Notes: generated from the sequence alone by a model not told the origin. Positions 46,057 to 61,550 are shown, counted from the stretch's first letter. The stretch is DNA of 64,000 nt from IMGVR_UViG_3300030085_002431:1-64000, one strand, 5' to 3'. Numbers and translations are program-made.

Positions 46057-46506
46057 ATGGCAAATACTAAACGTGTTCAGATCCGTAAGGGTTCTGAGCC
46101 CGAACATCAGGCTTTTACTGGTGCTCTGGCAGAAATCACTTACGATACTACTAAAAAGTCCATCAGAATGCATGATGGAACAACTTTGGGTGGTTTTGAC
46201 GTACAAAAATCTAGGTACGATTTTTTAAATGGAGCAACCACTCTCGTCACCAATGTTAAGTACTTTGCCGACACCGTAAACGGAGCATACTCCGTTACCT
46301 TGCCTACCTTTAAGGCAATTGGTGACACTATTATTATAGTTGATGCCGAGGCATATTGGGATATAAATAATCTCACGGTGCTAACTCAAAATAATGAAAC
46401 ATTTAAGGATTATACAGGACTAATTGAATCCCCTTTGGTGTGTGACGTTGCTGGTGCGGCAATAGAACTTATTTGGGAAGGCAGTTACTGGAGATTAATC
46501 GCATGA
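46057..46506 (+). CDS. fibre-associated protein with Mtd_N/hyaluronidase-like N-terminal motif
   Basis: KRVQIRKGSEPEHQAFTGALAEITYDTTKKSIRMHDGTTLGG; C-terminal AYSVTLP...IIIVDAEAYW..NNLTV. Confidence 0.75.
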   Translation: MANTKRVQIRKGSEPEHQAFTGALAEITYDTTKKSIRMHDGTTLGGFDVQKSRYDFLNGATTLVTNVKYFADTVNGAYSVTLPTFKAIGDTIIIVDAEAYWDINNLTVLTQNNETFKDYTGLIESPLVCDVAGAAIELIWEGSYWRLIA

Positions 46507-46901: not shown

Positions 46902-49900
46902 ATGGCAGACTTTAGACTTGGAAGACTAAAATTCAACTGGAGAGGTGACTGGGTAGCAGGAACCGCTTACGTCATCGATGACATCGTAAAGTTTGGTGCA
47001 AATACTTACGTCTGTACCACCAATCATACTTCCGTCACTGATGAAACTACCTGGTATACCACTGACCTAACAAAGTGGTCACTCCACACTGAAGGTATAA
47101 GAGATCGTGGCACTTGGTCAAGTGGTGTTTTTTACAAAATCAATGACCTTGTTACCTATGGAAATACTTCCTATCGTGTAACAACCGCATTTACCTCAAC
47201 AGCACCATTCTCAACAACTTATCTTGTTGAGTATCTCAGAGGATTTGAGTATGAAGATTCTTGGAATAGTTCAACTGAGTATCAGCAAGGTGATGTTGTA
47301 AACTATGGTGGTTATTCATACATTGCTACCAGCATTAATACAAATAAACCACCATCAGATTATCTCTCAGCAGATTGGGATGTAATTACAACAGGTTTTG
47401 ACGTAGTTGGTGCTTATAGTACTACTACAAACTACAAACCAGGTGATGTTGTTCAACGTGGTGGTTATGCTTACGTTGCAATCACAACTTCAATAAATGT
47501 AGAACCAACTCAAACTGGAAGTTGGGACCTTATTGTTAAGGGTATTGATTGGAAAGGTGCTTTCAGCACATCTACCACTTATCAATTGGGTGACGCAGTA
47601 AGTAGAAATAGTAATTCTTATATTAGTGTTGCATCAACTAACACTGGTAATGACCCAGCAACTGATGCTACTGGTGAATACTGGAATCCTCTAACTCAGG
47701 GTTCTGAAACCAATGTCATGACCACTGGTGGTGACATCATTTATCAGTCTGGTGCTGGTCCTACAAGATTACCAGTTGGTGCTGGTGGTTCAGTTCTTAC
47801 TGTTTCTAGTGCTGGATATCCACAATGGGAATCAAATAATGTAACTGATCCTGTTTATTATGTTGCAGAAGAGGGTAGTGATACCAATACTGGTGAAAAT
47901 ATTTCAAATGCATTTGCATCACTAGGTAAAGCACTATCGGTTGCAACTGGAAATGCAACAATTTATGTAAAAGCAGGTGATTACAACGAGACACTACCAC
48001 TAGTAGTGCCTTCTTCTGTAACTGTTGTTGGTGATAACATCAGAACAACAAAAATTAAAGCAGCTAGTGGAAGTGGAAACCACTGGGATATTGGATTAAA
48101 TATCGCAATTACTGATATTACTTTTGGTTCAGTTATTACCTTCTCAAATGGTGCTAGAGGAACATATATTGATTCCGATGCCCATGATAAAAATATTGAG
48201 ATTATCCGTAATATCAATTATCCAGCACCTTCACCATCAACAACAATAACCCACGTTGATAACGTACCATATAATACTAACGTTGTTACTGTAACAACAG
48301 CAGCAAATAGAACAAATGCACAATCCAAGATGTTCTTGGTTAGTGATAAGACAATGCTTAAAGACCTCCAGATGGAAGGTCTAACTGGATATCAAGTAGC
48401 AGGTACTGCATATTCGGCATCTGGTTCTATTAGTGGAACTACTCTAACTTCATCAAATCTAATTTCGGATTTGATTGGAACAACAGTTACTGGTTCTGGT
48501 GTTTCTGCAGCAACTAAAATTGTTAATGTTCTCAATTCAACCACTGCAGAAGTAAGTGTTTCCCAGACCGTTGGTTCTACTACACTTACATTTACTGCAC
48601 CTCCTCAGGACATTAATAATGCAACAGTTAGGGGTATCTTTGTTTCATTGAACCCTTCTACACCAATCACTAAGTCTCCTTACATCTCACAGTGTTCGGC
48701 ATTCTCAACTGCTGGCATGGGTGCGAAAGTTGATGGAAGAGTCCATAGAGCATTCCCACCAGGTAGTTCAACTCCTTCTAATAAGTCAATTGTTTTTGAC
48801 TCATTCACCAACATTCACGATGAGGGTGTTTCTTTCTGGGTTACTAACAATGGTGCTGCAGAATTCGTTTCTTGCTTCAGTTACTATGCTCATATTTCTT
48901 ATGCAGCAACTCGTGGTGGAAGAATCCGTTCACTCGCAGGTAACTCTTCTTGGGGAACTTATGGACTTGTAAGTTCTGGTTACAACGCAGATGAAGCTCC
49001 AGTAAATGGAGTTGTTGAAGGTCTTCAACTTAAGTTTGCTGCTTCTACAGTTACTGGTACAGGATTTGTTGAAGGTGGTAGAATTATTGGTAGTACTTCA
49101 GGTGCTCAAGGACATATTAATTCCTCACAATCTGAAAAACTAATCTATTCATTGATTTCTGCTGGACCTCTTGGTGTTGGTACTGGATTTGCAATGGGTG
49201 AAACCATTACTGCATCTAACGGAACAACAGCAACACTTCTTTCTAATACTGATGCTAACACTGGTATTAATGGATTTACATTCCCAATGTCTGGATTGCC
49301 ATCTACTTTAGAAGAAGGTGGTAGTGTTGAATTCATTACTGGTTCTGGTAATGGTGGTATTAATAATCAAACAGTTACTGGTGCTGACCAATTCACTTAT
49401 GTTGTTTCAAATGTAAGTTACAACGCACCAGATGGTAGAGGGGATTTAGCAGTTACTAGAGGAGCATTGGGTTCTGTTGCTGCTGGTCACACTGGTGGTA
49501 CAACATTCATCACTTCATATCCAGAAACTGGTACTACAGAAACACTATTGACTGCTGCTGCACCAAGTGATACAACAATTTTCGTTTCTAGTTCTTCTGG
49601 ATTCGTACAAAATGGATTTGCAAAAGTTGGTGATGAACTAATGCAAGTCACTAATATTCTTTCTAGTACTTCACTTGAAGTTACTAGAGCTGCACAAGGT
49701 TCTGGTTCTGCTGGTTCTTATAATTCAGGTGCTCCTGTTGTTTCTATTGGTCAATCTGTAGCAGTTTCTTCTGAGTTGTTTAAGGATACTGTAAGTGGTG
49801 ATACAACTCTTCGTGTAAAACCAACTACTGGATTTACAACATCAATGTACATCAAGATTGATTCTGAGTTTATTGATGTTAACTCAGTAACTGCAGATAG

Positions 49901-50432
49901 TCTTGGTCAATCTATCGTTGTTCTTGCTGAAGAAAAAGCAGCAAAGGCATATGATGGACAAGCAGTTAAGATTAGATTCCTGTATTCACAGGGAAGATTC
50001 ACAGGTCACGACTTCTTACAAGTTGGTACTGGTGGAACTTCAACAACAAATTGGCCTGGTATTCCTACACAGGATCCAGTACAAACACAGGAAGTTGTTG
50101 AAGATTTCCCAGGTCGTGTTTTCTACGTATCTGCTGACTCTAACGGTAACTTCCGTGTTGGTAAGTACTTTAAGGTTAATCAGGCAACTGGTTCTGCAAC
50201 CTTGAATGCTTCCGCATTCGACCTATCTGGTCTGACCTCCTTGAGACTTGGTTCAATTGGTGCTCAGTTGGGTGCTCAAATTAATGAGTTCTCAACAGAT
50301 ACTACACTTTCTCAGAACAGTAATGAGAAGGTTCCTACTCAGGCAGCAGTTAAGGCATACATCGACAATGCTGACGCATCTACCAAGAAGACCGCACAGA
50401 GTGAGGGTTACTTCTTCGGTAATAGCCTCTGA
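46902..50432 (+). CDS. long tail-fibre/tailspike-like protein
   Basis: MADFRLGRLKFNWRGDW start; about five WxxxxxYxxxDxVxYxG modules; pectin-lyase-like start (GSDTNTGENISNAFASL...IYVKAGDYNE.LPLVVP); C-terminal INEFSTDTTLSQNSNEKVPTQAAVKAYID. Confidence 0.82.
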   Translation: MADFRLGRLKFNWRGDWVAGTAYVIDDIVKFGANTYVCTTNHTSVTDETTWYTTDLTKWSLHTEGIRDRGTWSSGVFYKINDLVTYGNTSYRVTTAFTSTAPFSTTYLVEYLRGFEYEDSWNSSTEYQQGDVVNYGGYSYIATSINTNKPPSDYLSADWDVITTGFDVVGAYSTTTNYKPGDVVQRGGYAYVAITTSINVEPTQTGSWDLIVKGIDWKGAFSTSTTYQLGDAVSRNSNSYISVASTNTGNDPATDATGEYWNPLTQGSETNVMTTGGDIIYQSGAGPTRLPVGAGGSVLTVSSAGYPQWESNNVTDPVYYVAEEGSDTNTGENISNAFASLGKALSVATGNATIYVKAGDYNETLPLVVPSSVTVVGDNIRTTKIKAASGSGNHWDIGLNIAITDITFGSVITFSNGARGTYIDSDAHDKNIEIIRNINYPAPSPSTTITHVDNVPYNTNVVTVTTAANRTNAQSKMFLVSDKTMLKDLQMEGLTGYQVAGTAYSASGSISGTTLTSSNLISDLIGTTVTGSGVSAATKIVNVLNSTTAEVSVSQTVGSTTLTFTAPPQDINNATVRGIFVSLNPSTPITKSPYISQCSAFSTAGMGAKVDGRVHRAFPPGSSTPSNKSIVFDSFTNIHDEGVSFWVTNNGAAEFVSCFSYYAHISYAATRGGRIRSLAGNSSWGTYGLVSSGYNADEAPVNGVVEGLQLKFAASTVTGTGFVEGGRIIGSTSGAQGHINSSQSEKLIYSLISAGPLGVGTGFAMGETITASNGTTATLLSNTDANTGINGFTFPMSGLPSTLEEGGSVEFITGSGNGGINNQTVTGADQFTYVVSNVSYNAPDGRGDLAVTRGALGSVAAGHTGGTTFITSYPETGTTETLLTAAAPSDTTIFVSSSSGFVQNGFAKVGDELMQVTNILSSTSLEVTRAAQGSGSAGSYNSGAPVVSIGQSVAVSSELFKDTVSGDTTLRVKPTTGFTTSMYIKIDSEFIDVNSVTADSLGQSIVVLAEEKAAKAYDGQAVKIRFLYSQGRFTGHDFLQVGTGGTSTTNWPGIPTQDPVQTQEVVEDFPGRVFYVSADSNGNFRVGKYFKVNQATGSATLNASAFDLSGLTSLRLGSIGAQLGAQINEFSTDTTLSQNSNEKVPTQAAVKAYIDNADASTKKTAQSEGYFFGNSL

Positions 50433-50482: not shown

Positions 50483-50803
50483 ATGGCTTCTGGAATTTTA
50501 GGACAATCCGCCCCTTCGGCAACTACTTTGACAACTGTTTATACAGTACCAAGTAGCACTCATTCTGTTGCGAACATTAACGTTCTTAATCGTAGTGCAT
50601 CAGCACCTGTAGATGTGAGAATTGCTTTATCTGCAACTGGAACACCTACATCAGCAGAGTACATCGAATATGATGTTTCTATTCCTGCTAAGGGTGTTAT
50701 GGAAAGAACTGCAATTTCATTGCAAGCAGGAAAGAACATTGTCGTTTATTGCTCTACTGGAGACACTTCTATCAGTGTCTACGGATTAGAGCAATCTGCT
50801 TGA
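50483..50803 (+). CDS. small beta-rich virion/fibre-associated protein
   Basis: TTVYTVP...ANINVLNRS...VRIAL...EYIEYDVSIP; a similar domain occurs twice in the 62717 ORF. Confidence 0.78.
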   Translation: MASGILGQSAPSATTLTTVYTVPSSTHSVANINVLNRSASAPVDVRIALSATGTPTSAEYIEYDVSIPAKGVMERTAISLQAGKNIVVYCSTGDTSISVYGLEQSA

Positions 50804-50815
50804 TAGGAGGGACCA

Positions 50816-51085
50816 ATGGGAAGATTCGTAGGTTTATCCATCAATAAAGGTGGAGGCGGTGGTGGTAGGCCACTTAATGAGGAGTTTACAAGAGCAACGG
50901 GTATCACTACCGACTCTAGTAACAATGTTACAGCAGTTACATTAGGTGATGTTTCCTATACTAATGTTGGTTATAGCACTGTTGGACTAATCACAGGATT
51001 CACTGAAAATGTCGGTGGTGTCACTAAGGTTTATCAACTGACTTATAATAGTGATAACTATGTTACAAATATTACGGAGGTATAA
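50816..51085 (+). CDS. small hypothetical protein (89 aa)
   Basis: GGAGG RBS at 50806; Gly run then Thr/Val beta-strands. Confidence 0.72.
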   Translation: MGRFVGLSINKGGGGGGRPLNEEFTRATGITTDSSNNVTAVTLGDVSYTNVGYSTVGLITGFTENVGGVTKVYQLTYNSDNYVTNITEV

Positions 51086-51088
51086 TTC

Positions 51089-52147
51089 GTGGCAGACGTA
51101 TTACTCTATAACTCATTAAACGATTCAAATAATGAGTATGCTAAAAGGTTGGATGACATTGATACCAACATGGCAGCAGAACAAGCTCGTGTTACTGCGG
51201 CTCAAACAAAATTAGATGTTGCTAATGCACAACTTGCTTCTGGTGGTGTAACTGGTAACTTCAGTCTTTGGTGTCTAATTCCAGAAGAGCCAGCAGATGG
51301 TTCTACATGGACTAGTGGAACAAGTTGTGGTTCTCTTAAGGTTTGTGATCAAACTGGATACTACCGTTGTGGTGCATCCTGTTCCTGGACAGTTCCAGCT
51401 GGTGCATCTTGTGCCAGATTCCAACTTTGGGGTGCTGGTGCTCCATCAGGAAGTAGTTGCTGTTGCGGTTTCTCTCCAATTGGTGGCAATGGTGCATATG
51501 CTTCTGTCATTATGTCAGTTACACCTGGAGACACATACACTCTATGTGCTGGTTGTGCATATTGTTGCTATGCAACAAGAAGTACATCAAATCAGGATGG
51601 ATGTCCTTCATACGTTCAGGGAAATGGACTTACTAACTTCTGTGCAGAAGGTGGTGAAGGAAATATCCAATGTGAAATGAAGACAAGGATGCAGGAAGGT
51701 AACCTCAATTCAGATTACTGTATGTACTTAGGTGCATGTATCTGTAATGGTGGTTCCGATACTTGCTATACGGGTGGACATACTTGCCAGATTGGTTGTA
51801 ACGATAACCAATGGTCTAATAAGTATGGATTCTTCCGTTCATGCAAAACATATTATGGAACATCAACTAGTGGAACTGTTTTTGGTATTAATGGTATGTT
51901 TAGTGCTATTTCTGCTGGTCACCGTGCATGTGTATATTATTGGTCAGCACCAGTTTATGGTTACCCAACTAACTCATGCTGCACAGGAGTATGGACTAGT
52001 GGTTGTGGTGGATGCGAACGTTCCGCACAGAGAGGATATCGTCAGATTCCAGGAGCAGGTGGATGGGGTAGCATGACAGACGGTGGTTGTAATACCGTTT
52101 GTGGTGATGCTGGAAGAATGGGCATGGTCTGTGTCACTTGGAAGTGA
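51089..52147 (+). CDS. Cys-rich, Gly-rich adhesin-like protein A (GTG start)
   Basis: GGAGG 8 nt before GTG; N-terminal coiled coil; WTVPAGxxCARFQLWGAG; about 31 Cys by manual count. Confidence 0.8.
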   Translation: MADVLLYNSLNDSNNEYAKRLDDIDTNMAAEQARVTAAQTKLDVANAQLASGGVTGNFSLWCLIPEEPADGSTWTSGTSCGSLKVCDQTGYYRCGASCSWTVPAGASCARFQLWGAGAPSGSSCCCGFSPIGGNGAYASVIMSVTPGDTYTLCAGCAYCCYATRSTSNQDGCPSYVQGNGLTNFCAEGGEGNIQCEMKTRMQEGNLNSDYCMYLGACICNGGSDTCYTGGHTCQIGCNDNQWSNKYGFFRSCKTYYGTSTSGTVFGINGMFSAISAGHRACVYYWSAPVYGYPTNSCCTGVWTSGCGGCERSAQRGYRQIPGAGGWGSMTDGGCNTVCGDAGRMGMVCVTWK

Positions 52148-52163
52148 TTTAATAGATATAGTT

Positions 52164-52171
52164 TATAAATA
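52164..52171 (+). promoter_or_regulatory. T4 late promoter, perfect consensus TATAAATA
   Basis: Intergenic, upstream of GGGGA RBS and ATG 52215. Confidence 0.85.
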
Positions 52172-52214
52172 ATCATACACAGAAGAATTTAGTTCAACAC
52201 AGGGGAAACTAACA

Positions 52215-52898
52215 ATGATAACGGAAAGTTTAACATATGCTGTTCCAGATGTTGCTTTTGTAGCAGGCATTTCTGGCAGTGTTACTCAAGACTTCCCATA
52301 TAATGGCCCAGAAAGCTTTTATGTGGAAATTGATGATGAGGGAGAAATCGTAAATATCGATGTTCCCTCAACACATAAAAATGCAATAGAGGTTACCTGG
52401 GCAGATAACCCAGAAATCTGTGCATTAGTTGGTCATTATTTTGTTGAAGATTGGAATGTAACACCTACTTTCGTCTCTGCTGATCTTGATGATGGATTTA
52501 CTCTTCCATCTGGTACTCCAACTACTTATCAAAAGAGAACTAATTATGAACTTGGTGACCTCTTCGAGGCCAAATATGATAGAGCAGCAGGAACCTGGTC
52601 AATGGAACAGATTGTCAAGCTAAAGGGTAGTCCTCTAATTGAAGAAGCAAAGAGAAGAAAGAGATATGTCAAGCAATATACTGACATGTTTGACTTTGCT
52701 GGTGATACTGGAACAGCAATTACTGCATTCCAAACAGCAATAGATAACTATCTTGCTGCTGCAGTATCAGTCCCTGTGTGGAACTATCTTCCTGAGCATT
52801 TTGCTCCTTACTTTGCTGATATCCCTAAAGTTCCTGCTCTTGCAGCAGCAGCATTTAAAGAACTTCCTGCAGATGAATCATTGGAGGCACTTAGCTGA
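52215..52898 (+). CDS. hypothetical protein between the two Cys-rich paralogues
   Basis: 227 aa, acidic, one Cys; TGA overlaps the next ATG. Confidence 0.8.
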   Translation: MITESLTYAVPDVAFVAGISGSVTQDFPYNGPESFYVEIDDEGEIVNIDVPSTHKNAIEVTWADNPEICALVGHYFVEDWNVTPTFVSADLDDGFTLPSGTPTTYQKRTNYELGDLFEAKYDRAAGTWSMEQIVKLKGSPLIEEAKRRKRYVKQYTDMFDFAGDTGTAITAFQTAIDNYLAAAVSVPVWNYLPEHFAPYFADIPKVPALAAAAFKELPADESLEALS

Positions 52899-53941
52899 TG
52901 GACGTATTAGCATATAGCGCATTTAATAGAAGGGCAGAACTTGATGCCCAAGTAACAGCTAAAGAGGTTCAACTAGAAGCTCTTAGGCAGTGTGTCAGAG
53001 ACATTGATGCCCAAGTAACATCTAGAGAGGCAGCAGCAAGCTGGTTATCGAGTGGTGAGTATTCAATGCTCTGCTGTCCTCATAAATTTTCAGATTATGA
53101 AACTTTAATTGAAAATTACGAACTTTCTACTGAAAATAATGGATTTAAAGTTTGTAATACACAATCTCAATTTAACTGTGGTAATAGCTGTACTTGGACA
53201 GTTCCAGCTGGTGTAACTTGTGCCAGATTCCAACTTTGGGGTGCTGGTGGTGGTTCTGGATCTGGATGCTGCTGTGGTGGTTCACCATTTGGTTCATCTG
53301 CAGCATATGCAACAGTTTCTTTACCAGTCGTAGAAGGTTGTCAATATACAATTTGTTCTGGTTGTTCATATTGTTGCTTCCCCACTACTGGAACTTGTGG
53401 AAGACTTCCTGGTTGCCCATCCTACGTTCAGGGACACGGATTAACTAATTTCTGTGCAGATGGTGGTCAAGGAAGAATTGGAACCATGTTTGCAATGTAT
53501 GGTCACCGTTGCAGGTGCAGAATGCAGAACATTCAGTGTAATGATTCTGGTGGTTGTATCTGCAGTTTCGGTGCAGATTATTGCTTCGATAATTCCTGTG
53601 CATCTTGCGGTAAGATTGGATGCTTTATCCCTGGTGCTATGTACTTTGGTGCAGCACACTGTGGATCAGTTGTTAGGGGTGTCCGTGGCATGTGGCCTGA
53701 GATTTGCTACGATACAAACCACTACGGTTACGAAATGAGACCACCAATGTACGGTCTTCACTGCTGCCTCTGGTGTTTCCCTTATAGTAGTGGTTATTGC
53801 TGTGGTTGCGAGTGCTCAGCATCCCGTGGATGCCACCGATATCCAGGAATGGGTGGTTGGGCATCTCACACAATGAGTGGTGCTACTGGTATCTGTGGTG
53901 ATATGGGTAGAATGGGTATGGTTTGCATTACCTATTGCTGA
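52898..53941 (+). CDS. Cys-rich, Gly-rich adhesin-like protein B (paralogue of 51089-52147)
   Basis: Same WTVPAG..CARFQLWGAG, GCPSYVQG.GLTNFCA.GG and CGD.GRMGMVC blocks; about 40 Cys by manual count. Confidence 0.8.
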   Translation: MDVLAYSAFNRRAELDAQVTAKEVQLEALRQCVRDIDAQVTSREAAASWLSSGEYSMLCCPHKFSDYETLIENYELSTENNGFKVCNTQSQFNCGNSCTWTVPAGVTCARFQLWGAGGGSGSGCCCGGSPFGSSAAYATVSLPVVEGCQYTICSGCSYCCFPTTGTCGRLPGCPSYVQGHGLTNFCADGGQGRIGTMFAMYGHRCRCRMQNIQCNDSGGCICSFGADYCFDNSCASCGKIGCFIPGAMYFGAAHCGSVVRGVRGMWPEICYDTNHYGYEMRPPMYGLHCCLWCFPYSSGYCCGCECSASRGCHRYPGMGGWASHTMSGATGICGDMGRMGMVCITYC

Positions 53942-53962: not shown

Positions 53963-53970
53963 TATAAATA
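53963..53970 (+). promoter_or_regulatory. T4 late promoter, perfect consensus TATAAATA
   Basis: Heads the glycosyltransferase-carbamoyltransferase-heptose operon. Confidence 0.85.
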
Positions 53971-54012
53971 GGAGTATCAGAAATTTATATTACTTGATTG
54001 GAGTATTTGTTC

Positions 54013-55107
54013 ATGGAGAAAGCATTTTTCATCAATGGTGGAGCAGGGAGAGTTCTCTGCTCCATTCCTGCGCTTGAGCATTATGCGGAAACACATGATG
54101 ACTTTGTAATTGTTGCAGAGTCATGGGGAGAGTTTTATGCAATGAGTCCAAAGCTCAGAGAAAAAGCATTTCCAATTCATCATAAGGGACTATTTAAGGA
54201 CCACCTTAGGGATAAAGAAATCATATCACCAGAACCATATCGTTTGAATGCTTATTTCAATCAAAAAGCAAATTTGATTCAAGCATTTGATATTCTCATA
54301 AATGGTGAAACTGAAGTTCCACCTACAAAAAAATTATCATTAGATATTAATAAAAAAGACCAAATTGTTGGTCATAATATGATTCAGGAAGTCAAAGAGA
54401 CCTTAAAGAAAGATAAAGTAATTGTATTTCAACCTTTTGGAAGCACTGTAGAGGTGCAAGGTAATTTTATAATTGACAGTAGTGGAAGAAGTTTTGAACT
54501 TTCTAATGTAGTTGAAATAATTAAAGAACTACAAAAAGATTATGGTATAATTATTATGTCTCAAGTTCCTATTCCAGGATGGGAACAAATGGGAGTTGCA
54601 TACCCTAAAGATGTAAGTCTTCTTCAGTGGGCAGGAATTATTAATGCTGCTGATTATTTTCTTGGATGTGACAGTGTTGGTCAACACTTGGCACATGCTG
54701 TAGGGAAACCAGCAACAGTTGTTATTGGGTCAACATTTCCAGAAAACATAACATATCCTGATAATAAGGATTTCAATGTTATCGATTTGGGGTTAAACAA
54801 AAGGTTATATAGTCCAATTAGAATGGTCTTTGATGATACTTCAGACAGAGTAAATGAATCCCTAATGGTAATGAATGAATCTGTTCTTAAAAAAATTAAA
54901 AAAGCAATTAAGGATAAGATTGGAGTAAGTAAAAAAACGGTGATTCCGCAACTTTCTCCTAATACTGATAATACACCATTACCCGTCCTTCCTGGAAAAA
55001 AAGCATCAGTAAAATCATCAACGAACGGATTTTCCCTTCCAGGAAAGCAAATAAATAAAAAGAAACCAATTGATGAAATTCTGGAATTAAACGAAATTAA
55101 AAATTGA
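54013..55107 (+). CDS. GT9-like (ADP-heptose:heptosyltransferase-type) glycosyltransferase
   Basis: INAADYFLGCDSVGQHLAHAVGKPATVVIGST matches the GT9 signature; KVIVFQPFGS. ATG 54013 is preferred over TTG 53998 because GGAG lies at 54000-54003. Confidence 0.72.
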   Translation: MEKAFFINGGAGRVLCSIPALEHYAETHDDFVIVAESWGEFYAMSPKLREKAFPIHHKGLFKDHLRDKEIISPEPYRLNAYFNQKANLIQAFDILINGETEVPPTKKLSLDINKKDQIVGHNMIQEVKETLKKDKVIVFQPFGSTVEVQGNFIIDSSGRSFELSNVVEIIKELQKDYGIIIMSQVPIPGWEQMGVAYPKDVSLLQWAGIINAADYFLGCDSVGQHLAHAVGKPATVVIGSTFPENITYPDNKDFNVIDLGLNKRLYSPIRMVFDDTSDRVNESLMVMNESVLKKIKKAIKDKIGVSKKTVIPQLSPNTDNTPLPVLPGKKASVKSSTNGFSLPGKQINKKKPIDEILELNEIKN

Positions 55108-55118
55108 GGTGAATTTTA

Positions 55119-56822
55119 ATGAGTACTATTGTTGCGTGTAATCGTGGGCATAACTCCGCCACGACGTTAGTTATTGATGGGGAAGTAAAGTTTTATATCG
55201 AAGAAGAACGTCTAACCAGAAGGAAGTATGATGGTGCTCCTTTGGCAGGACTATTGAAGGTATTTGATTATGTTGATGAAGTAGACCATCTTATTGTTTG
55301 TCATACGCATAGAGACGGTCCAAAACTGGACTGGACTAGGGAAGATGTATATGTTGGATTCATCCGAAAGATGATGAAAAACAAACCTTTCCAAGTTCAT
55401 TATGTTGATGAAATTCACCATGAGTTACATGCTGCTTGTGCATTTATTAACTCTGGATTTGAAACTGCTGCATGTTTAAGTGTTGATGGTGCTGGTAGTT
55501 TCCTTAAGAGTGATGCTTTTTCAGAGACAGGATATGAATTTGAAACAATTTTCAGAGCATCATATCCATTACAATTTGAGCAAGTTTATCAACATATCGG
55601 AACTCACTCTCGTGTTGGAATGTTACGTTTGGAGGATACTGAAAATAATTCAACTACAGTAGTAACTGAATATCCAGGTATCACAAAAGCATACGAAGCA
55701 ATCACTGATTACTGCGGTTTTACTTCTATTGAAGCAGGTAAAACCATGGGTCTTTCCCCTTATGGAAGAGAGAATCCTGATATTCCACCTTTTATTACTC
55801 ATGATGGGTGGGTAGATAGGTCAGTATTTACACCAACTTTCCCTAATGGTTCAGTGGTCAATAAAGAAAGATTTGATGCTATTAGAGAGGATTCCAATAT
55901 TCATGAAAAGGGTTCATATACTCAGTTCCAAAAAGATATGGCATATAAAATTCAGAGAGAATCTGAAAAGTATATGTTTAATTTAATCAGAAAAGCACAT
56001 GAGTTGACTGGTGAAACAAACTTTTGTATTGCTGGTGGATTTGGTCTAAATTGTGTTGCAAACTATAAGTATTGGAAAGAATTTCCCGATTTTAACATTT
56101 ATTGTGAACCAATTTCTCATGATGGGGGAACTCCTCTTGGTGCAGCAAAAATGTTGCATCTTAGAGAGATTGATTCATATGAACCACCTGCACCTACTAC
56201 TTCTATATACTATGGTCCACAATACGATCCAGCAACTTATGAGAGTGATTTAGTTGGTCTTGATGTTAAAGATACTTCATATGATGATGTTGCAAAATTA
56301 ATTCGTGAAGGTAATATCGTAACCATTTTTCAAGGCAGGTCTGAGGGTGGTCCTAGAGCACTTGGGAATCGTTCTATCCTATTTGACCCAACTATTCCTG
56401 ATGGAAAAGACATTGTTAATCGTGTGAAAAGGAGAGAATTCTTTAGACCATTTGCTTGCTCTATTAAGAAAGAAGCAGCTTGTGATTGGTTTGACCTTGC
56501 TGGTCGTGAGGAAACACCACATATGATGTATGCTGTAGATGCCCTCCCTGGTGTTGCAGAGAAAGTTCCTTCCGTCATCCATGTGGATGGAACATGTAGA
56601 ATTCAAACTGTTACTCCAGAACAGAATGAGCACTACTATAATCTCATTGATGCTTTTGAAAAATTAAGTGAAGTTCCTATTCTCTTCAATACTTCTTTCA
56701 ATCTTGGTGGTGACCCTCTAGTAGAAACAATTGAAGATGCAGTAAACACATTAAACAAGAGTGATATTGAGTATCTTTATCTCCCAGAAATTCAAAAACT
56801 TGTATACATTCCCAACATTTGA
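55119..56822 (+). CDS. NodU/CmcH/TobZ-family carbamoyltransferase 1 (motifs intact)
   Basis: EEERLTR.K, HHELHA, VDGAG, GKTMGL, GGFGLNCVAN, DGG, QGRSEGGPRALGNRSIL, KRREFFRPFA, HVDGTCRIQTV, NTSFN. Confidence 0.92.
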   Translation: MSTIVACNRGHNSATTLVIDGEVKFYIEEERLTRRKYDGAPLAGLLKVFDYVDEVDHLIVCHTHRDGPKLDWTREDVYVGFIRKMMKNKPFQVHYVDEIHHELHAACAFINSGFETAACLSVDGAGSFLKSDAFSETGYEFETIFRASYPLQFEQVYQHIGTHSRVGMLRLEDTENNSTTVVTEYPGITKAYEAITDYCGFTSIEAGKTMGLSPYGRENPDIPPFITHDGWVDRSVFTPTFPNGSVVNKERFDAIREDSNIHEKGSYTQFQKDMAYKIQRESEKYMFNLIRKAHELTGETNFCIAGGFGLNCVANYKYWKEFPDFNIYCEPISHDGGTPLGAAKMLHLREIDSYEPPAPTTSIYYGPQYDPATYESDLVGLDVKDTSYDDVAKLIREGNIVTIFQGRSEGGPRALGNRSILFDPTIPDGKDIVNRVKRREFFRPFACSIKKEAACDWFDLAGREETPHMMYAVDALPGVAEKVPSVIHVDGTCRIQTVTPEQNEHYYNLIDAFEKLSEVPILFNTSFNLGGDPLVETIEDAVNTLNKSDIEYLYLPEIQKLVYIPNI

Positions 56823-56834
56823 TTTTAAAAAATT

Positions 56835-58499
56835 ATGGATAACGAAAAATTCTATCAATTGACATATAATACTAGTGGAACTGCTTCTGCAGTTTTAACT
56901 AAAAATGATACTGTAGACAAGGTTTATATTGAAGAGAGATTTACAAACATGAAGGATAATATTCCTTTAATTTGTCTCAAAGATATTGCTCATGGAAAAT
57001 GCATTTCTCATATGGGAATAACATCAAACGATGATTATTCTGGAAACGAGTGGGCAGTACTAACTAAATTCTTCTCAATTTATAGTGGAAGTACTAGTAA
57101 AGAAAACAGCCAAATTGTAACTCATCAGGAATCTCATTATCTACAATCTCTATCTGCATCACTAAATTCTGGTTTTACAGAACCCCATGTTTTTTGCTTT
57201 ACTAAACCAGGAGCACAGTCTGAGTATGGTAAACCCCATGAAAGTATCTTTTTGATGAATCCAAAAAGAGGAGTTTGTCAACTTGCATTTCGACAAGTTT
57301 TAGGTCCAAATGTTCGAGTTAAGAGAGAAGAAGGCGTTCCAGAAGCATATTACAACAGAAAAACATTTTCTATTTGCAATGCATTTGAATCTATTAAAGA
57401 ATTTACAAATTGTTCAACACTTAAGGAGATGTATGCTGTTGGGCAGTTAGGAACTGATGATAAGATGATTCCTAGCATTCTATCCAAGTGTGGTGCTCAG
57501 ACTTCTCAATTTAAATTAGATGGGAAAAAGCAAATATTCAATGAATATGAATATATTAAGGAAGTAAGTGATGGTAAAAAGAAAAGAGATATTTCTTTAA
57601 ATCTAGTATATCGAATTCAAAAGGATTATGAACGTTATTTGATTGATGCTGTTAATGAATATTTCAGCAGCCAGACTAGAGATGTAGCATCAACGTCAAG
57701 GGAATTAATCATTACTGGAACACTTAACGATAATGTAAGAGCAAATTACTTATTGCTAAAATCTTTAGATGATGATTTTACTCTATATGTTGATCCGATT
57801 TCTAATGAAGTTAGTAATAGTATGGGACTCGCATATGAACTTATAGGTTCTTGTGAGATGGCACCTAAAGGAGTTGATAATTTTTATCTTGGTAGAGAAC
57901 TAGATCCAACTGATTACAATCTACTTGAGCAAGAAGATGAAAAAACTGTAACACCAAAAGAAGTTGCTGAGTTAATTGCAGACGGAAATGTTGTTGCTAT
58001 TGCTCAGGGACGTTCTGAAATAACAGACCATGCTCTTGGAAATCGTTCTATTGTTGCAGACCCAAGAACTATTGAATCTAAACAAATCTTAAGTAGGTCT
58101 AAGTATCAACCAGATCATATTCCATGTATTACATCCGTCCTGGAAGAAAGTGCTAGTGATTGGTTTGACATGGATAAATTGAAGAGTAGTCCAGAAGCAA
58201 TGTATGCAGTTGATGCTCTGGATGTTACTAAAGAACAAGCACAGGGTGCAGTCTATACCGATGGATCAACTAGAGTACAAACTGTTAATGAAGGATATAA
58301 TCAGAATTACTACAATTTAATTAAAGAATTTGGTGATTTGACTGGTGTTCCAATGCTTCTTAATACGTCTCTTAATATGCATACATATCCAATGTGTGAT
58401 AATATGGAAAATATTATGTCATTTATGAGATGCTCTGGAGTAAACTATTTGTATCTTCCAGAAACTGGAAAACTATTGTTTGTGCCTACTGATTCTTAA
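56835..58499 (+). CDS. carbamoyltransferase paralogue 2, full length but with degenerate catalytic motifs
   Basis: Retains QGRSE...ALGNRSI, DGSTRVQTV and LNTSLN but has lost most signature residues (see findings). Confidence 0.82.
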   Translation: MDNEKFYQLTYNTSGTASAVLTKNDTVDKVYIEERFTNMKDNIPLICLKDIAHGKCISHMGITSNDDYSGNEWAVLTKFFSIYSGSTSKENSQIVTHQESHYLQSLSASLNSGFTEPHVFCFTKPGAQSEYGKPHESIFLMNPKRGVCQLAFRQVLGPNVRVKREEGVPEAYYNRKTFSICNAFESIKEFTNCSTLKEMYAVGQLGTDDKMIPSILSKCGAQTSQFKLDGKKQIFNEYEYIKEVSDGKKKRDISLNLVYRIQKDYERYLIDAVNEYFSSQTRDVASTSRELIITGTLNDNVRANYLLLKSLDDDFTLYVDPISNEVSNSMGLAYELIGSCEMAPKGVDNFYLGRELDPTDYNLLEQEDEKTVTPKEVAELIADGNVVAIAQGRSEITDHALGNRSIVADPRTIESKQILSRSKYQPDHIPCITSVLEESASDWFDMDKLKSSPEAMYAVDALDVTKEQAQGAVYTDGSTRVQTVNEGYNQNYYNLIKEFGDLTGVPMLLNTSLNMHTYPMCDNMENIMSFMRCSGVNYLYLPETGKLLFVPTDS

Positions 58500-58501
58500 T
58501 A

Positions 58502-60124
58502 ATGTATATCTTATCCATACATGAATCTCATGATGCAAGTATGGCTCTTATTAAAGATGGGGAGGTTTTAATTAACCTCTCCCATGAAAGATTAAGTCAT
58601 ATAAAGCATGATAGGAGAATTAATTTATTTGCTTCAAAAATAAAACAGTATACAAATTATGTTGATAAGGTTGTTGTAAGTTGTCTTCATAATTCTATAA
58701 AAGAAGTTGATTTTCCACTTTATGCAAACTATTGTGGAATTGATTTTGGTGAGATAGTTGACTATTCTCCGTTTCATCACATATCACATTCATATTTGGC
58801 ATTCAAACATTCAAATTTTGAGAATGCTATTAGTGTTGTTCTTGATGGTGCAGGTTCTGAAAAACCAGAAGTACAGTATCATGGTGTTGCACTCAAAGAA
58901 TGCGAGTCCGCCTATCAAATAAATCCACATATGACTGCTTGCATTTATAAATCATATGTTGGTCAAAGATCTGAAAATTTTGAATTTCCATATGAAGTTG
59001 GTGGAATTGACAGAAGAATTGGTATTGGAATGGCATATAGTGGAATCACAGAGGCTCTTGGATATGGAGAAAATGAAGATGGTAAGACTATGGGATTATC
59101 TGCATATGCATCAGAAGAGCAAATAAATTCTATTCCAAAATTGGTAGAGTTAAGTCATGGTGCTGATGGAAATAAATTTAAGTTATTTCGTGGTGGTGTT
59201 TTAGGATATTGTTCAGCACTTATTGATATACCAAAAGAATTACATGTTGAATATGCTGGAAGAATTCAAAGGGACTTTGAGGAGTATGTTATTCAGTTAG
59301 TTCATGGTATTGTTCAAAAAACAGGGTGTAGGAATATTGTTTTATCTGGTGGTTGTTTCCTTAATTGTGTAGCAAATTTTAAACTAAGAAAATCACTACC
59401 CCCCGAATTTAATATATTTGTCGAACCAATGTCTGGTGATGATGGTATTGCACTAGCTAATGCTTTCATGGTTGATGATATGATCAACCCAAAGAATAGA
59501 AAACTGAATACATTATATCTTGGTAGTCAGTTGGAATATGAGTATACTTTAAGTGATGGAGAGTCTGAAGTAGTAACTACACCAAAAGAAGTAGCACAAT
59601 TAATTTCTGAAGGAAATTGTATTGCTATTGCTCAGGGACGTTCTGAGAGTGGTCCTAGAGCATTGGGTAATCGATCTATATTGTTTGACCCAAGAGATAA
59701 AGATGGTAAGGATAAGGTAAATAAAATTAAAAAGAGAGAATACTTCAGACCCTTTGCTGCTACAGTTCTTCATGAGAATAGTCAACAGTGGTTTGACATG
59801 GATAGTCTTGATGAAAGTCCATACATGACTTATGCTGTAGATGTACTACCAGACAAATCTAAGACAATACCTGCTGTAACACATGTCAATAATACATGTA
59901 GAATACAAACTCTTAAACAGGAACAAAATAAAAACTATTACGAATTAATAAATGAGTTTTATAAGTTGACAGATGTTCCTATGGTATTAAACACTTCATT
60001 CAATCTTGCTGGTGATACTATGGTTGAAACAATAGAGGATGCTTTAAAAACACTAAGACTTAGTGAATTGGAGTATCTTTACTTACCAGAAACTAAAAAA
60101 CTTATTCATGTCCCCAACAAATGA
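58502..60124 (+). CDS. NodU/CmcH/TobZ-family carbamoyltransferase 3 (motifs intact)
   Basis: HESHDAS, HHISH, LDGAG, DGKTMGL, SGGCFLNCVAN, DDG, QGRSESGPRALGNRSIL, KKREYFRPFA, NTSFN. Confidence 0.92.
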   Translation: MYILSIHESHDASMALIKDGEVLINLSHERLSHIKHDRRINLFASKIKQYTNYVDKVVVSCLHNSIKEVDFPLYANYCGIDFGEIVDYSPFHHISHSYLAFKHSNFENAISVVLDGAGSEKPEVQYHGVALKECESAYQINPHMTACIYKSYVGQRSENFEFPYEVGGIDRRIGIGMAYSGITEALGYGENEDGKTMGLSAYASEEQINSIPKLVELSHGADGNKFKLFRGGVLGYCSALIDIPKELHVEYAGRIQRDFEEYVIQLVHGIVQKTGCRNIVLSGGCFLNCVANFKLRKSLPPEFNIFVEPMSGDDGIALANAFMVDDMINPKNRKLNTLYLGSQLEYEYTLSDGESEVVTTPKEVAQLISEGNCIAIAQGRSESGPRALGNRSILFDPRDKDGKDKVNKIKKREYFRPFAATVLHENSQQWFDMDSLDESPYMTYAVDVLPDKSKTIPAVTHVNNTCRIQTLKQEQNKNYYELINEFYKLTDVPMVLNTSFNLAGDTMVETIEDALKTLRLSELEYLYLPETKKLIHVPNK

Positions 60125-60519
60125 AAATATCTTTTGTCAATGGTTGTTTTGATGTATTACATCCAGGACACGTTGAACTTTTAAATTATGCTAGTTCTTT
60201 TGGTGATTACTTAATTGTTGCTATTGACTCAGATAGAAAAGTGGCAGAGATGAAAGGTCCAGACAGACCGATATTCTCTCAATCTGATAGGGCATATATG
60301 CTAAAAGAAATAAGATGTGTTGATGTAGTACATATTTTTGATACTAGACAAGAACTAGAGTCTTTGCTAGATTCATTGAGACCTGATACAATGGTCGTAG
60401 GTTCAGACTGGAAAGGAAAAGAAGTAGTAGGTTCACAGTATGCCAAATCAGTCAAATTCTTCGACAGAATCGGAGACTACTCAACAACAAAAACAATTCA
60501 AGGTTCTTCTTATCGGTGA
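60121..60519 (+). CDS. HldE/RfaE-type heptose-1-phosphate nucleotidyltransferase (stand-alone domain)
   Basis: NGCFDVLHPGH (HxGH), LIVAIDSD..V...KG..RP, VVGSDW, YSTT. Confidence 0.9.
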   Translation: MKISFVNGCFDVLHPGHVELLNYASSFGDYLIVAIDSDRKVAEMKGPDRPIFSQSDRAYMLKEIRCVDVVHIFDTRQELESLLDSLRPDTMVVGSDWKGKEVVGSQYAKSVKFFDRIGDYSTTKTIQGSSYR

Positions 60520-61237: not shown

Positions 61238-61550
61238 TATTGATGCAACCATTTGTACCCCAGGTACATGTGAAGCATGTAGATATGAAGGTTCCACACC
61301 AATTCAAGATAGGATTGATAAAATAAATAAGTTGTATGATGATGGGCATATCATCAAATACTTTACTGCCCGAGGCATGGGAAGGTATAATGATGATGCG
61401 GAAAAGGCACGGGAAAAATTTTACGGACTAACCAAAATGCAATTAGATATTTGGGGATGTAAGTATCATGAACTTATTCTCGGAAAACCATCAGCAGACT
61501 ATTACATAGATGACAAAGCTGTAAATTCAGATGACTTCTTCAAGACCTAG
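61221..61550 (+). CDS. minimal capless HAD-superfamily phosphatase
   Basis: VDIDATIC (motif I DxDxT), FTARG (II), GKPSADYYIDDK (III/IV). Confidence 0.82.
   Translation: MRYVVDIDATICTPGTCEACRYEGSTPIQDRIDKINKLYDDGHIIKYFTARGMGRYNDDAEKAREKFYGLTKMQLDIWGCKYHELILGKPSADYYIDDKAVNSDDFFKT

What the first reader, a model, noticed from the sequence alone, without database searches (positions are those of the whole stretch)
51089..53941. Pair of extremely Cys-rich adhesin-like paralogues with an intervening partner gene
Seen: two ~350-aa proteins with about 31 and 40 Cys (9-12%), CC and CCC motifs, N-terminal coiled coils, shared conserved blocks and divergent loops. They sit directly after the long fibre gene and before the sugar-modification operon, separated by a Cys-poor 227-aa gene. 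Established: T-even gp38-type adhesins are Gly-rich distal tip proteins with hypervariable loops, and phage proteins folded in the reducing cytoplasm are normally Cys-poor. Inference: disulfide-locked or metal-stapled receptor-binding tips, possibly a heteromer, with the 227-aa protein as chaperone or adaptor. No thiol oxidase is visible in this window.
Basis: partly seen in the sequence, partly recalled or inferred. Interest (0 to 1): 0.65.

Follow-up and report, generated by a model that had tools for sequence, protein, structure and literature searches.

The report
Cysteine-rich cyanophage tail-fibre pair with partner gene
Two very cysteine-rich genes in this Prochlorococcus-type phage encode short tail-fibre proteins of a known fold, the TNF-like plus glycine-rich fold of cyanophage Pam3 gp24, in which a conserved set of about 20 cysteines replaces part of the glycine lattice; the gene between them is their constant partner, probably an assembly factor.

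Summary
A (51089-52147) is 352 aa with 31 Cys. C (52898-53941) is 347 aa with 40 Cys. B (52215-52898) is 227 aa with 1 Cys. The phage's median Cys content is 1.2%.

The window belongs to a complete 250.6-kb P-SSM2-like cyanomyovirus. The A-B-C cassette occupies the same position in P-SSM2 and in 15 metagenomic loci.

A folds confidently (pLDDT 85): a 50-residue N-terminal helix followed by a beta domain. The best structural match is the Pam3 tail fibre gp24 (Z 13.9), then a Bxb1 tail-tip chain and the ALK TNF-like/glycine-rich domain. A profile of the family also hits true Gly_rich_2 repeats (i-E down to 3e-15), so A and C are Cys-rich derivatives of a known receptor-binding fibre fold.

About 23 Cys columns are at least 80% conserved. 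The family has 559 representative clusters, nearly all with 6-15% Cys.

B orthologues always lie next to Cys-rich genes, even in distant loci. B has a beta N-domain and a helical C-domain, but no significant match to known fibre chaperones.

Disulfide versus metal stapling is unresolved. Cys counts show no bias to even numbers, the genome encodes no thiol oxidase, and Pam3 virions are a precedent for functional disulfides. I rate it a new variant of a known kind, of moderate interest.

The parts
46902..50432 (+). 1176-aa tail-fibre gene (context) with N-terminal CBM_5_12 repeats; it heads the conserved fibre module
   Evidence: phrog_9851 tail fiber protein, E 0; CBM_5_12 E 4e-17. Orthologues of 1174-1552 aa precede the cassette in all loci whose upstream flank was recovered.
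50483..50803 (+). 106-aa conserved small protein similar to N-terminal parts of tail-fibre PHROGs
   Evidence: phrog_11338 E 8e-10 and phrog_693 E 3e-7. Orthologues at 63-70% identity are present in most loci.
50816..51085 (+). 89-aa Gly-rich small ORF, present in only some related loci
   Evidence: Orthologues in P-SSM2, L009, L010 and L016; absent elsewhere. No family match.
51089..52147 (+). Cys-rich fibre protein A (352 aa, 31 Cys), the upstream paralogue
   Evidence: phrog_35878 E 5e-90. AF2 pLDDT 85.3, pTM 0.84. Pam3 gp24 Z 13.9, Bxb1 tail tip Z 12.4, ALK TG domain Z 9.2.
51092..51238 (+). N-terminal long alpha-helix of A (residues 2-50); presumed trimerisation and docking stalk
   Evidence: DSSP on the AF2 model. 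Residues 3-10 are at least 90% conserved in the family. The analogous helix of gp24 docks the fibre to the baseplate (PMC9608196, PMC9942802).
51305..52144 (+). TNF-like / modified glycine-rich domain of A (residues 73-352); carries all Cys except C62
   Evidence: This is the range aligned to 7ypx_A, 9d93_Qa and ALK. Profile positions 86-213 align to Gly_rich_2 repeats of P0210.
52164..52171 (+). TATAAATA, a T4-type late-promoter-like motif 44 nt upstream of B
   Evidence: Four of the five copies in the window lie just upstream of gene starts on the coding strand.
52215..52898 (+). Protein B (227 aa, 1 Cys): constant partner of the Cys-rich genes and candidate fibre assembly factor
   Evidence: AF2 pLDDT 89.5: beta domain 1-132 and helical domain 140-215. 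Orthologues lie between or after Cys-rich genes in all loci, including distant ones (A3 profile E 3e-42, 2e-38 and 5e-19). Its stop overlaps the start of C.
52898..53941 (+). Cys-rich fibre protein C (347 aa, 40 Cys), the downstream paralogue
   Evidence: phrog_35878 E 2e-84 and a sub-threshold PF21722 Gly_rich_2 match at residues 96-155 (18.7 bits against a 24.3 cut-off). 39% identical to A.
53963..53970 (+). TATAAATA late-promoter-like motif upstream of the GT9-like gene
53998..55107 (+). 369-aa GT9-like (heptosyltransferase-like) gene that always follows the cassette (context)
   Evidence: phrog_8954 E 1e-145. Weak matches to Glyco_transf_9 and heptosyltransferase III. Orthologues at 54-64% identity in every locus.

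Best explanation
A and C are two anciently duplicated short tail-fibre (receptor-binding) proteins of a P-SSM2-like T4-type cyanophage. Each has the three-part plan of the Pam3 fibre gp24. A long N-terminal helix would bundle three chains and dock the fibre on the tail. It is followed by a TNF-like beta-sandwich. Last comes the loop lattice that is glycine-rich in canonical relatives. In this family part of that lattice carries a conserved scaffold of about 20 cysteines (CCC in the first loop, CxxCxxCC in the second, and others), with variable segments between them that would form the receptor-contacting distal surface. The cysteines most likely staple the thin loop lattice covalently. They would do so mainly as disulfides formed once the particle meets oxic seawater, because the phage has no thiol oxidase of its own. 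This would give a rigid, long-lived adhesin. B is a dedicated accessory protein made with them from a late promoter, most likely a fibre assembly chaperone comparable to gp25 of Pam3. Shown here: the genes, the Cys conservation, the fold, the homology to Gly_rich_2, the synteny and the ancient duplication. Inferred: the trimer, virion location, receptor binding, the disulfide chemistry and B's chaperone role.
For: Fold of A: AF2 pLDDT 85.3, pTM 0.84. VIA-align gives Pam3 gp24 (7ypx_A) Z 13.9, 192 residues, rmsd 3.1; Bxb1 tail tip Z 12.4; ALK TNF-like/Gly-rich domain Z 9.2. Foldseek E 1e-8 and 1e-6 for the first two. BFVD is dominated by 'glycine-rich domain-containing' phage proteins.
Sequence link: the family profile hits all 7 PF21722 repeats of P0210, with i-E down to 2.7e-15.
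Domain fusions: relatives P0255 and P0268 carry the same CBM_5_12 repeats as the neighbouring long fibre.
Cys conservation: 23 columns at 80% or more in 119 sequences. 559 representative clusters, nearly all 6-15% Cys.
Synteny: the fibre - 106 aa - Cys-rich - B - Cys-rich - GT9-like order holds in P-SSM2 and 15 other loci. The Cys-rich / B-family / Cys-rich order recurs in distant loci L024 and L026, and L023 has three fibre-plus-small-protein pairs, the first small protein being B-family.
Duplication: the upstream copies form a clade with 100/99 support and the downstream copies one with 99/97.
B: beta N-domain plus helical C-domain, the same layout as gp25 (PMC9608196). Weak leads point to Phage_tail_APC / tail assembly chaperone clusters.
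Late-promoter motif upstream of B.
Precedent: Pam3 fibres are held by disulfides and released by DTT (PMC9942802). 86 of 119 family members have a Cys in the N-terminal helix region.
Against: There are no virion proteomics for any phage carrying the family. Sullivan 2010 analysed S-SM1, Syn9 and S-PM2, not P-SSM2.
Neither A nor C reaches the PF21722 gathering score, and no PDB chain is found by sequence.
Cys counts are even in 122 and odd in 119 of 241 members, which is not what a fully paired intrachain disulfide network predicts.
The phage encodes no Erv, DsbA, VKOR or thioredoxin, only a glutaredoxin.
I could not read model coordinates, so no S-S distances were measured.
B has no significant structural or HMM match to gp25, Mu Tfa, PF16778 or PF02413.
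Gly content is about 15%, against 39% in the gp24 glycine-rich domain, so the lattice may be substantially remodelled. The model places two short helices at 193-208.
Confidence: 0.6

Rival explanations
1. Same fibre proteins, but the cysteines hold metal ions (Zn, Fe or Cu thiolate sites, possibly on the three-fold axis) rather than disulfides. The proteins would then fold fully in the reducing cytoplasm without any oxidase.
For: No thiol oxidase in the genome. Cys counts show no bias to even numbers. Motifs of the CxxCxxCC, CCC and CxC type are invariant. Co-varying Cys columns include a triplet (A residues 94/159/160) rather than clean pairs. The short-type relatives in Sf-FS3 have CxCxxC followed by His in two of three copies. 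From general knowledge: T4 gp37 and gp12 tips bind Fe and Zn on the trimer axis.
Against: There are few conserved His, Asp or Glu partners (A has only 2 His). Dozens of metal-binding thiols per fibre would be costly in metal-poor oligotrophic water, and thiolate clusters are exposed to oxidation there (inference). The closest characterised virion, Pam3, uses disulfides. Some variable Cys do appear or disappear as pairs (A 195/252 and 86/348).
Confidence: 0.25
2. B is not a chaperone but a structural adaptor that stays in the particle. It would join A and C into one heteromeric fibre or link them to the baseplate or the long fibre.
For: B sits between the two paralogues and is translationally coupled to C by a stop/start overlap. 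Both paralogues are retained everywhere. B's N-domain gave faint Foldseek hits to the TssK baseplate protein (probability 0.3).
Against: In L023 each of three Cys-rich fibre genes is followed by its own small Cys-free protein, which is the classic fibre-then-chaperone order. In Sf-FS3 one B-like gene follows three Cys-rich genes. The weak look-alike leads point to tail assembly chaperones. B diverges faster (24-33% identity) than A and C (41-49%) across the same loci, as tip-binding chaperones do.
Confidence: 0.25
3. A and C are not virion parts at all. They would be intracellular or released Cys-rich proteins, for example metal-sequestering or host-surface-modifying factors working with the neighbouring sugar-modification genes.
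For: No proteomic evidence for virion location. The cassette always abuts the GT9-like and carbamoyltransferase cluster. Among isolates it occurs only in the large cyanomyoviruses that carry such clusters.
Against: The best fold matches are a tail fibre and a tail-tip protein. The genes lie inside a run of fibre genes with late-promoter motifs. The conserved N-terminal docking-type helix and the fusions to fibre-type CBM_5_12 N-termini also argue against it.
Confidence: 0.07

Closest known systems
Pam3 tail fibre gp24 with its chaperone gp25 (freshwater myocyanophage; PDB 7YPX/7YFW; PMC9608196, PMC9942802)
   Same: The three-part plan is the same: long N-terminal helix, TNF-like sandwich, distal loop lattice (Z 13.9 over 192 residues). 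Size is similar (250-350 aa). A small gene directly downstream has a beta N-domain and a helical C-domain. The host is also a cyanobacterium. Pam3 virions use disulfides functionally, including a Cys in the fibre helix.
   Different: Sequence identity is 19% and there is no HMMER hit. The gp24 distal domain is 39% Gly and is not described as cysteine-rich, whereas A and C have about 15% Gly and 9-12% Cys. There are two paralogous fibres flanking one partner gene instead of one fibre plus one chaperone. B shows no detectable similarity to gp25. The phage is a 250-kb T4-like virus, not a minimal myophage.
Pfam PF21722 Gly_rich_2 (glycine-rich domain of phage and giant-virus fibre proteins)
   Same: The motif block WTVPAGV...FQ.WG.G.G...GG.GAY...V..G..Y is shared. 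The family profile aligns to all 7 true repeats in P0210 (i-E down to 2.7e-15). BFVD fold hits are mostly proteins with this annotation.
   Different: A does not match the Pfam model, and C matches below the cut-off (18.7 against 24.3 bits). Cys occupy positions that are Gly, Ala, Gln or Ile in the canonical repeat, and there is a 4-residue Cys-bearing insertion (CxxCxxCC).
ALK/LTK TNF-like + glycine-rich (TG) ligand-binding domain (PDB 7NX3, 7LIR, 7LS0)
   Same: Same supradomain fold (Z 7.4-9.2 over about 150 residues).
   Different: It is an animal receptor ectodomain that binds a cytokine. Nothing suggests functional equivalence, and it has no N-terminal trimerising helix.
T-even / S16 gp38 adhesin
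   Same: It is a distal receptor-binding module built from glycine-rich motifs with variable distal loops. The Pam3 authors align gp24 to gp38 (RMSD 2.7 A over 52 CA, PMC9608196).
   Different: gp38 (6F45) was not among the listed matches of either PDB fold search here. gp38 caps gp37 through a small N-domain, whereas A and C carry a 50-residue helix like a self-standing fibre.
PHROG 35878 / 4205; P-SSM2 PSSM2_304 and PSSM2_306; S-SSM7, S-SSM6a and Sf-FS3 short forms
   Same: These are direct family members (E 5e-90; 45% identity to PSSM2_304). The synteny is the same.
   Different: All are annotated as hypothetical or of unknown function, and I found no published description of them as fibres or as Cys-rich proteins.

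Membership tests
Pam3 gp24-type fibre (N-helix + TNF-like + glycine-rich domain) | Long N-terminal alpha-helix preceding the beta domains | tested here: met
   The AF2 model of A has a helix at 2-50 and a short helix at 58-63. C aligns over the same region.
Pam3 gp24-type fibre (N-helix + TNF-like + glycine-rich domain) | TNF-like sandwich plus distal loop-lattice fold | tested here: met
   7ypx_A Z 13.9, rmsd 3.1, 192 of 250 residues, model range 73-352. It stands well above the unrelated rows. Foldseek E 1e-8.
Pam3 gp24-type fibre (N-helix + TNF-like + glycine-rich domain) | Distal domain very rich in glycine (39% in gp24) forming GRM layers | tested here: not met
   A is 14.8% Gly and C 13.8% Gly overall, with 8.8% and 11.5% Cys. 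Gly runs are only partly kept. The layer geometry could not be inspected because no coordinates were available.
Pam3 gp24-type fibre (N-helix + TNF-like + glycine-rich domain) | Homotrimer located on the baseplate of the virion | not testable with these tools
   There are no proteomic or structural data for any phage carrying the family.
Pfam PF21722 Gly_rich_2 | Score above the curated gathering cut-off (24.3 bits) | tested here: not met
   C scores 18.7 bits (E 0.0019) and A has no hit. The only match in the genome is C, at 17.2 bits.
Pfam PF21722 Gly_rich_2 | Detectable homology to bona fide members | tested here: met
   The profile of 82 family members hits all 7 PF21722 repeats of P0210 (repeats confirmed at E 2e-86) with i-E from 2.7e-15 to 5e-5.
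T-even gp38 adhesin | gp38 fold and a small N-domain that caps the gp37 tip | tested here: not met
   6F45 is absent from the listed Foldseek and VIA matches. A has a 50-residue helix instead. The resemblance is only the one reported for gp24 in PMC9608196.
Tail-fibre assembly chaperone (Pam3 gp25 / Mu Tfa / PF16778 / PF02413), tested for protein B | Gene adjacent to, and usually downstream of, the fibre gene it serves | tested here: met
   B or a B-family gene follows a Cys-rich gene in every locus examined, including the distant L023, L024 and L026.
Tail-fibre assembly chaperone (Pam3 gp25 / Mu Tfa / PF16778 / PF02413), tested for protein B | N-terminal beta domain plus C-terminal helical oligomerisation domain | tested here: met
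   AF2 model with pLDDT 89.5: strands within residues 2-132 and helices at 140-156, 163-182, 197-202 and 208-215.
Tail-fibre assembly chaperone (Pam3 gp25 / Mu Tfa / PF16778 / PF02413), tested for protein B | Sequence or fold similarity to a known chaperone | tested here: not met
   No Pfam or NCBIfam hit. PF16778 finds nothing in the genome at E up to 10. No PDB match of significance. The only leads are weak: an atlas fold row at TM 0.29 and feature scores of 0.85 to Phage_tail_APC clusters.
Fully intrachain disulfide-bonded extracellular domain | Even number of cysteines per chain | tested here: not met
   65 even against 54 odd in 119 members, and 122 even against 119 odd in 241 members. 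This does not exclude interchain bonds or a few free or metal-bound Cys.
Fully intrachain disulfide-bonded extracellular domain | Cys positions conserved across homologues | tested here: met
   23 columns at 80% Cys or more in 119 sequences. 11 columns at 80% or more and 19 at 60% or more in 241 more diverse members.
Fully intrachain disulfide-bonded extracellular domain | A phage- or host-supplied oxidation route in the assembly compartment | tested here: not met
   No Erv/ALR, DsbA, VKOR or thioredoxin in the 250.6-kb genome. There is one glutaredoxin at 165200-165376. Host factors and oxidation after lysis were not testable.

The most novel reading that the evidence does not exclude
The Cys lattice is a maturation or redox switch. 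The fibres would fold with free thiols in the reducing cell, with B shielding them. They would become covalently locked by a dozen or more disulfides per chain only after lysis into oxic seawater, perhaps including a disulfide from the helix Cys to the tail, as in Pam3. The two anciently separated paralogues would occupy two non-equivalent sites on the baseplate, like the up and down gp24 fibres of Pam3, giving two receptor specificities. That would make extracellular oxidative maturation of the adsorption apparatus a widespread trait of ocean cyanophages.
Probability: 0.2. Interest if true: 0.75.

Novelty: new variant of a known kind. Interest (0 to 1): 0.5.

Why it matters
Receptor-binding proteins of marine cyanomyoviruses are largely unassigned, although they set host range for the viruses that control Prochlorococcus and Synechococcus. 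This work gives a fold and a likely role to a large unannotated family: PHROGs 35878 and 4205, and 559 representative clusters. It also names a testable isolate, P-SSM2 with genes 304-306. A fibre fold that normally depends on glycine packing has here acquired about 20 conserved cysteines in a protein made in a reducing cytoplasm. This raises a concrete question about how ocean phage particles are stabilised, by disulfides formed after release or by bound metals. It also bears on whether redox conditions affect adsorption, as reduction does for Pam3.

Tried and rejected
1. Complex prediction of A (residues 60-352) with B returned 'no answer' (score 0.00, controls not run). It is evidence neither for nor against binding.
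2. Sequence searches of the A family profile and the B family profile against PDB gave nothing meaningful.
3. Fold searches for B found no significant match in Foldseek PDB. The VIA searches returned only generic helical-bundle hits, for example the DnaK lid at Z 8.1 over 70 residues, which is below the level that means anything for helical bundles. Pam3 gp25 and Mu Tfa did not appear.
4. B has no Pfam, NCBIfam or PF16778 match. The third homologue search, with the B profile, added no annotated relatives.
5. Cys presence/absence co-variation, meant to separate pairs (disulfides) from larger groups (metal sites), gave a mixed picture: some reciprocal pairs (A 86/348, 195/252) and one triplet (94/159/160). 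It is confounded by phylogeny and alignment quality, so I treat it as inconclusive.
6. Model coordinates are not exposed to the Python box, so S-S distances, the position of the CCC motif relative to the trimer axis, and the mapping of variable segments to the distal tip could not be measured.
7. Literature: no virion proteome for P-SSM2, and no paper describing Cys-rich cyanophage fibres. The Bxb1 structure paper is not held, so the Bxb1 chain is cited only by its PDB entry title.
8. The CxxCxxC...CP pattern in A (153-173) resembles a ferredoxin 4Fe-4S motif. I rejected it as a lead because the Pro is ancestral in Cys-free Gly_rich_2 repeats and an Fe-S cluster on an extracellular particle in oxic water is implausible.
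9. The reads tools (look-up of sequencing runs, read laying) were not used. No alternative genetic code was used.
Full report
**What is in the sequence**

- A, 51089-52147, has a GTG start and is 352 aa with 31 Cys (8.8%).
- B, 52215-52898, is 227 aa with a single Cys.
- C, 52898-53941, is 347 aa with 40 Cys (11.5%).

A and C both carry CCC at residues 124-126 and CxxCxxCC at 153-160. They are 39% identical (E 1e-62) and share 23 aligned Cys positions. The window is the first 64 kb of a complete 250,613-bp viral record. In a crude gene call of that genome the median Cys content is 1.2%. C ranks first and A fourth, and the only other ORFs at or above A's level are under 100 aa. Two details differ from the finding. 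Two small ORFs (106 and 89 aa) separate the 1176-aa fibre gene from A. B's stop codon overlaps C's start codon.

**Whose genome**

The region is syntenic with Prochlorococcus phage P-SSM2 genes PSSM2_301-308, all annotated as hypothetical apart from the fibre-like protein and the carbamoyltransferase. The module order is:
1. long fibre (1174-1552 aa, CBM_5_12 repeats)
2. 106-aa protein
3. an optional protein of about 90 aa
4. Cys-rich gene
5. B-type gene (219-229 aa, 0-3 Cys)
6. Cys-rich gene
7. GT9-like gene

This order recurs in P-SSM2 and in 15 metagenomic or IMG/VR loci. In a maximum-likelihood tree the upstream copies of ten loci form one clade (100/99 support) and the downstream copies another (99/97). 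The duplication is therefore old, and both copies have been kept everywhere.

**The family and its cysteines**

A has 630 homologues in the 90%-clustered collection. An exhaustive profile search found 559 representative clusters at E up to 1e-3, of which 117 are at E up to 1e-30. Nearly all listed representatives are 6-15% Cys.

In 119 near-full-length members, 23 alignment columns are at least 80% Cys. In 241 more diverse members, 11 columns are at least 80% Cys and 19 at least 60%.

Conservation is blocky. Residues 75-200 are highly conserved. Residues 36-50, 203-209, 228-247, 275-283 and 302-304 are variable.

**Fold of A**

AlphaFold2 with an 82-sequence alignment gives mean pLDDT 85.3 and pTM 0.84. 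The model has a helix at 2-50, a short helix at 58-63, and a beta-rich domain to the C-terminus.

| Search | Match | Score |
|---|---|---|
| Foldseek PDB | Pam3 fibre 7ypx_A | E 1e-8 |
| Foldseek PDB | Bxb1 tail tip 9d93 | E 1e-6 |
| Foldseek PDB | ALK glycine-rich / TG domain | E 2e-4 |
| VIA-align, independent | Pam3 gp24 | Z 13.9, 192 residues, rmsd 3.1 |
| VIA-align | Bxb1 tail tip | Z 12.4 |
| VIA-align | ALK | Z 9.2 |

Below these rows the VIA list holds only generic coiled-coil matches to the N-terminal helix. In BFVD, after the P-SSM2 and S-CAM3 relatives, the list is dominated by 'glycine-rich domain-containing' phage proteins and giant-virus fibre proteins.

Pam3 gp24 is a trimeric fibre. 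[quoted passage not shown] It needs the downstream chaperone gp25 (PMC9608196).

**Homology, not only resemblance**

Neither A nor C passes the PF21722 (Gly_rich_2) cut-off; C reaches 18.7 of 24.3 bits. However, the family profile hits a 5418-aa, Cys-poor protein (P0210) seven times, with i-E down to 2.7e-15. Those seven stretches are bona fide PF21722 repeats (E 2e-86).

The alignments show which canonical positions have become Cys:
- the tip of the first loop, where SGT-AQ becomes SSCCCG;
- the second loop, where VGAG--GS becomes CAGCAYCC, with a four-residue insertion;
- single sites in the strands.

The family is therefore a Cys-rich derivative of the glycine-rich fibre domain. Some relatives (P0255, P0268) carry N-terminal CBM_5_12 repeats like the adjacent long fibre. 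This ties the domain to fibre proteins again.

**Protein B**

Word-based search finds only close relatives. Positional orthologues at 24-33% identity are nonetheless present in every locus. A profile of them finds B-family genes between Cys-rich pairs in distant loci: L024 at E 3e-42 and L026 at E 2e-38. It also finds one after the first of three CBM-Cys-rich genes in L023 (E 5e-19). The other two L023 genes are each followed by a different small Cys-free protein. In Synechococcus phage Sf-FS3, three tandem 260-aa Cys-rich genes are followed by a 258-aa protein with weak profile similarity to B's N-domain (hhalign probability 56%).

B's AF2 model (pLDDT 89.5) has a beta N-domain (1-132) and a helical C-domain (140-215). 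This is the layout described for gp25 and Mu Tfa. No significant structural or HMM match to any chaperone was obtained. Two weak, independent leads point the same way: an atlas fold row (TM 0.29) and language-model feature hits (0.85), both to clusters carrying Phage_tail_APC, plus a Caudo_TAP cluster. These are leads only. A TATAAATA motif lies 44 nt upstream of B and another upstream of the GT9-like gene. Four of the window's five copies lie just upstream of gene starts on the coding strand, which is consistent with T4-type late expression. That reading rests on established knowledge of the T4 late-promoter consensus.

**Disulfides or metals**

This could not be settled.

For disulfides:
- the conserved Cys lie in a thin extracellular loop lattice;
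- some variable Cys come and go as pairs: A 195/252, which are both present in A and both absent in C, and A 86/348;
- Pam3 virions contain functional disulfides, including one from a Cys in the gp24 helix to the wedge, and DTT strips the fibres (PMC9942802);
- 86 of 119 family members have a Cys within the first 55 residues, including C (C32) but not A.

Against a fully paired intrachain network, and so leaving room for metal sites:
- the parity of Cys counts is random, 122 even to 119 odd;
- one co-varying group is a triplet;
- the genome encodes no Erv, DsbA, VKOR or thioredoxin, only one glutaredoxin.

My estimate is about 50% for mainly disulfide, probably formed after release into oxic water, and 25% for mainly metal. 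The remainder covers a mixture or something else.

**Mechanism proposed**

A and C are short trimeric receptor-binding fibres that dock through a conserved N-terminus; residues 3-10 are at least 90% conserved. They present variable distal segments held on a Cys-stapled version of the glycine-rich lattice. B assists their folding or assembly. The trimer, the virion location, receptor binding, the stapling chemistry and B's role are all inferences.

**Comparison with the known, and novelty**

The fold and the fibre-plus-accessory logic are known from Pam3 gp24/gp25, from Gly_rich_2, and more distantly from gp38. New here:
- the assignment of a large unannotated marine family (PHROGs 35878 and 4205) to that fold;
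- the conserved Cys scaffold;
- the ancient paralogue pair flanking one partner gene.

I rate this a new variant of a known kind, with interest 0.5.

**Limits**

There is no experimental evidence of virion association.

Noticed in passing
window 32210, 46362, 52164, 53963, 62680 (+ strand): The T4 late-promoter consensus TATAAATA occurs 5 times, all on the coding strand. Four copies lie 18-46 nt upstream of gene starts (ORFs at 32263, 52215, 53998 and 62705). The total count is no higher than chance (5 against 5.9 expected), but the placement is striking.
   Followed up: partly
window 53998-62680: Directly after the cassette comes a sugar-modification block. It holds a GT9-like gene, three tandem carbamoyltransferase paralogues (55119-56822, 56835-58499 with only the C-domain detected, and 58502-60124), a cytidylyltransferase, a PfkB kinase, a cupin and an epimerase. 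The GT9-like gene has its own late-promoter motif, so it may act on virion proteins rather than on host LPS. That idea is untested.
   Followed up: partly
phage records P-SSM2, P-SSM5, S-SSM7, S-SSM6a, Sf-FS3 (L001, L002): Among phage isolates, Cys-rich fibre genes were found only in the unusually large cyanomyoviruses that carry LPS-type gene clusters. The long form is in P-SSM2 and P-SSM5. A short 260-aa form without the long helix occurs at three places in each of S-SSM7, S-SSM6a and Sf-FS3.
   Followed up: partly
L023 47-6632 (contig of GCA_029935995.1): Three consecutive proteins (565, 515 and 532 aa) have CBM_5_12 N-termini and 6-7% Cys; the first two hit the Cys-rich family profile. Each is followed by a small Cys-free protein (220, 148 and 168 aa), and only the first of these is B-family. 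It looks like a swap-in array of fibre and chaperone pairs.
   Followed up: partly
window 36008-38539: An 843-aa ORF inside the tail/fibre gene run carries a subtilase (Peptidase_S8) domain (E 2e-11). This is unusual for a virion module.
   Followed up: no
window 40125-46022 and 46057-46506: A 1965-aa protein has an N-terminal Reelin subrepeat-B domain and long internal repeats. It is followed by a 149-aa protein with an Mtd_N (major tropism determinant N-terminal) domain.
   Followed up: no
protein P0210 (metagenomic, 5418 aa): A giant Cys-poor protein with at least 7 tandem Gly_rich_2 domains spaced about 330 residues apart. It served as the sequence bridge between the Cys-rich family and the canonical domain.
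   Followed up: partly
G000 165200-165376: The only thiol-redox gene detected in the 250.6-kb genome is a glutaredoxin (38.4 bits). No thioredoxin, DsbA, VKOR or Erv was found.
   Followed up: yes
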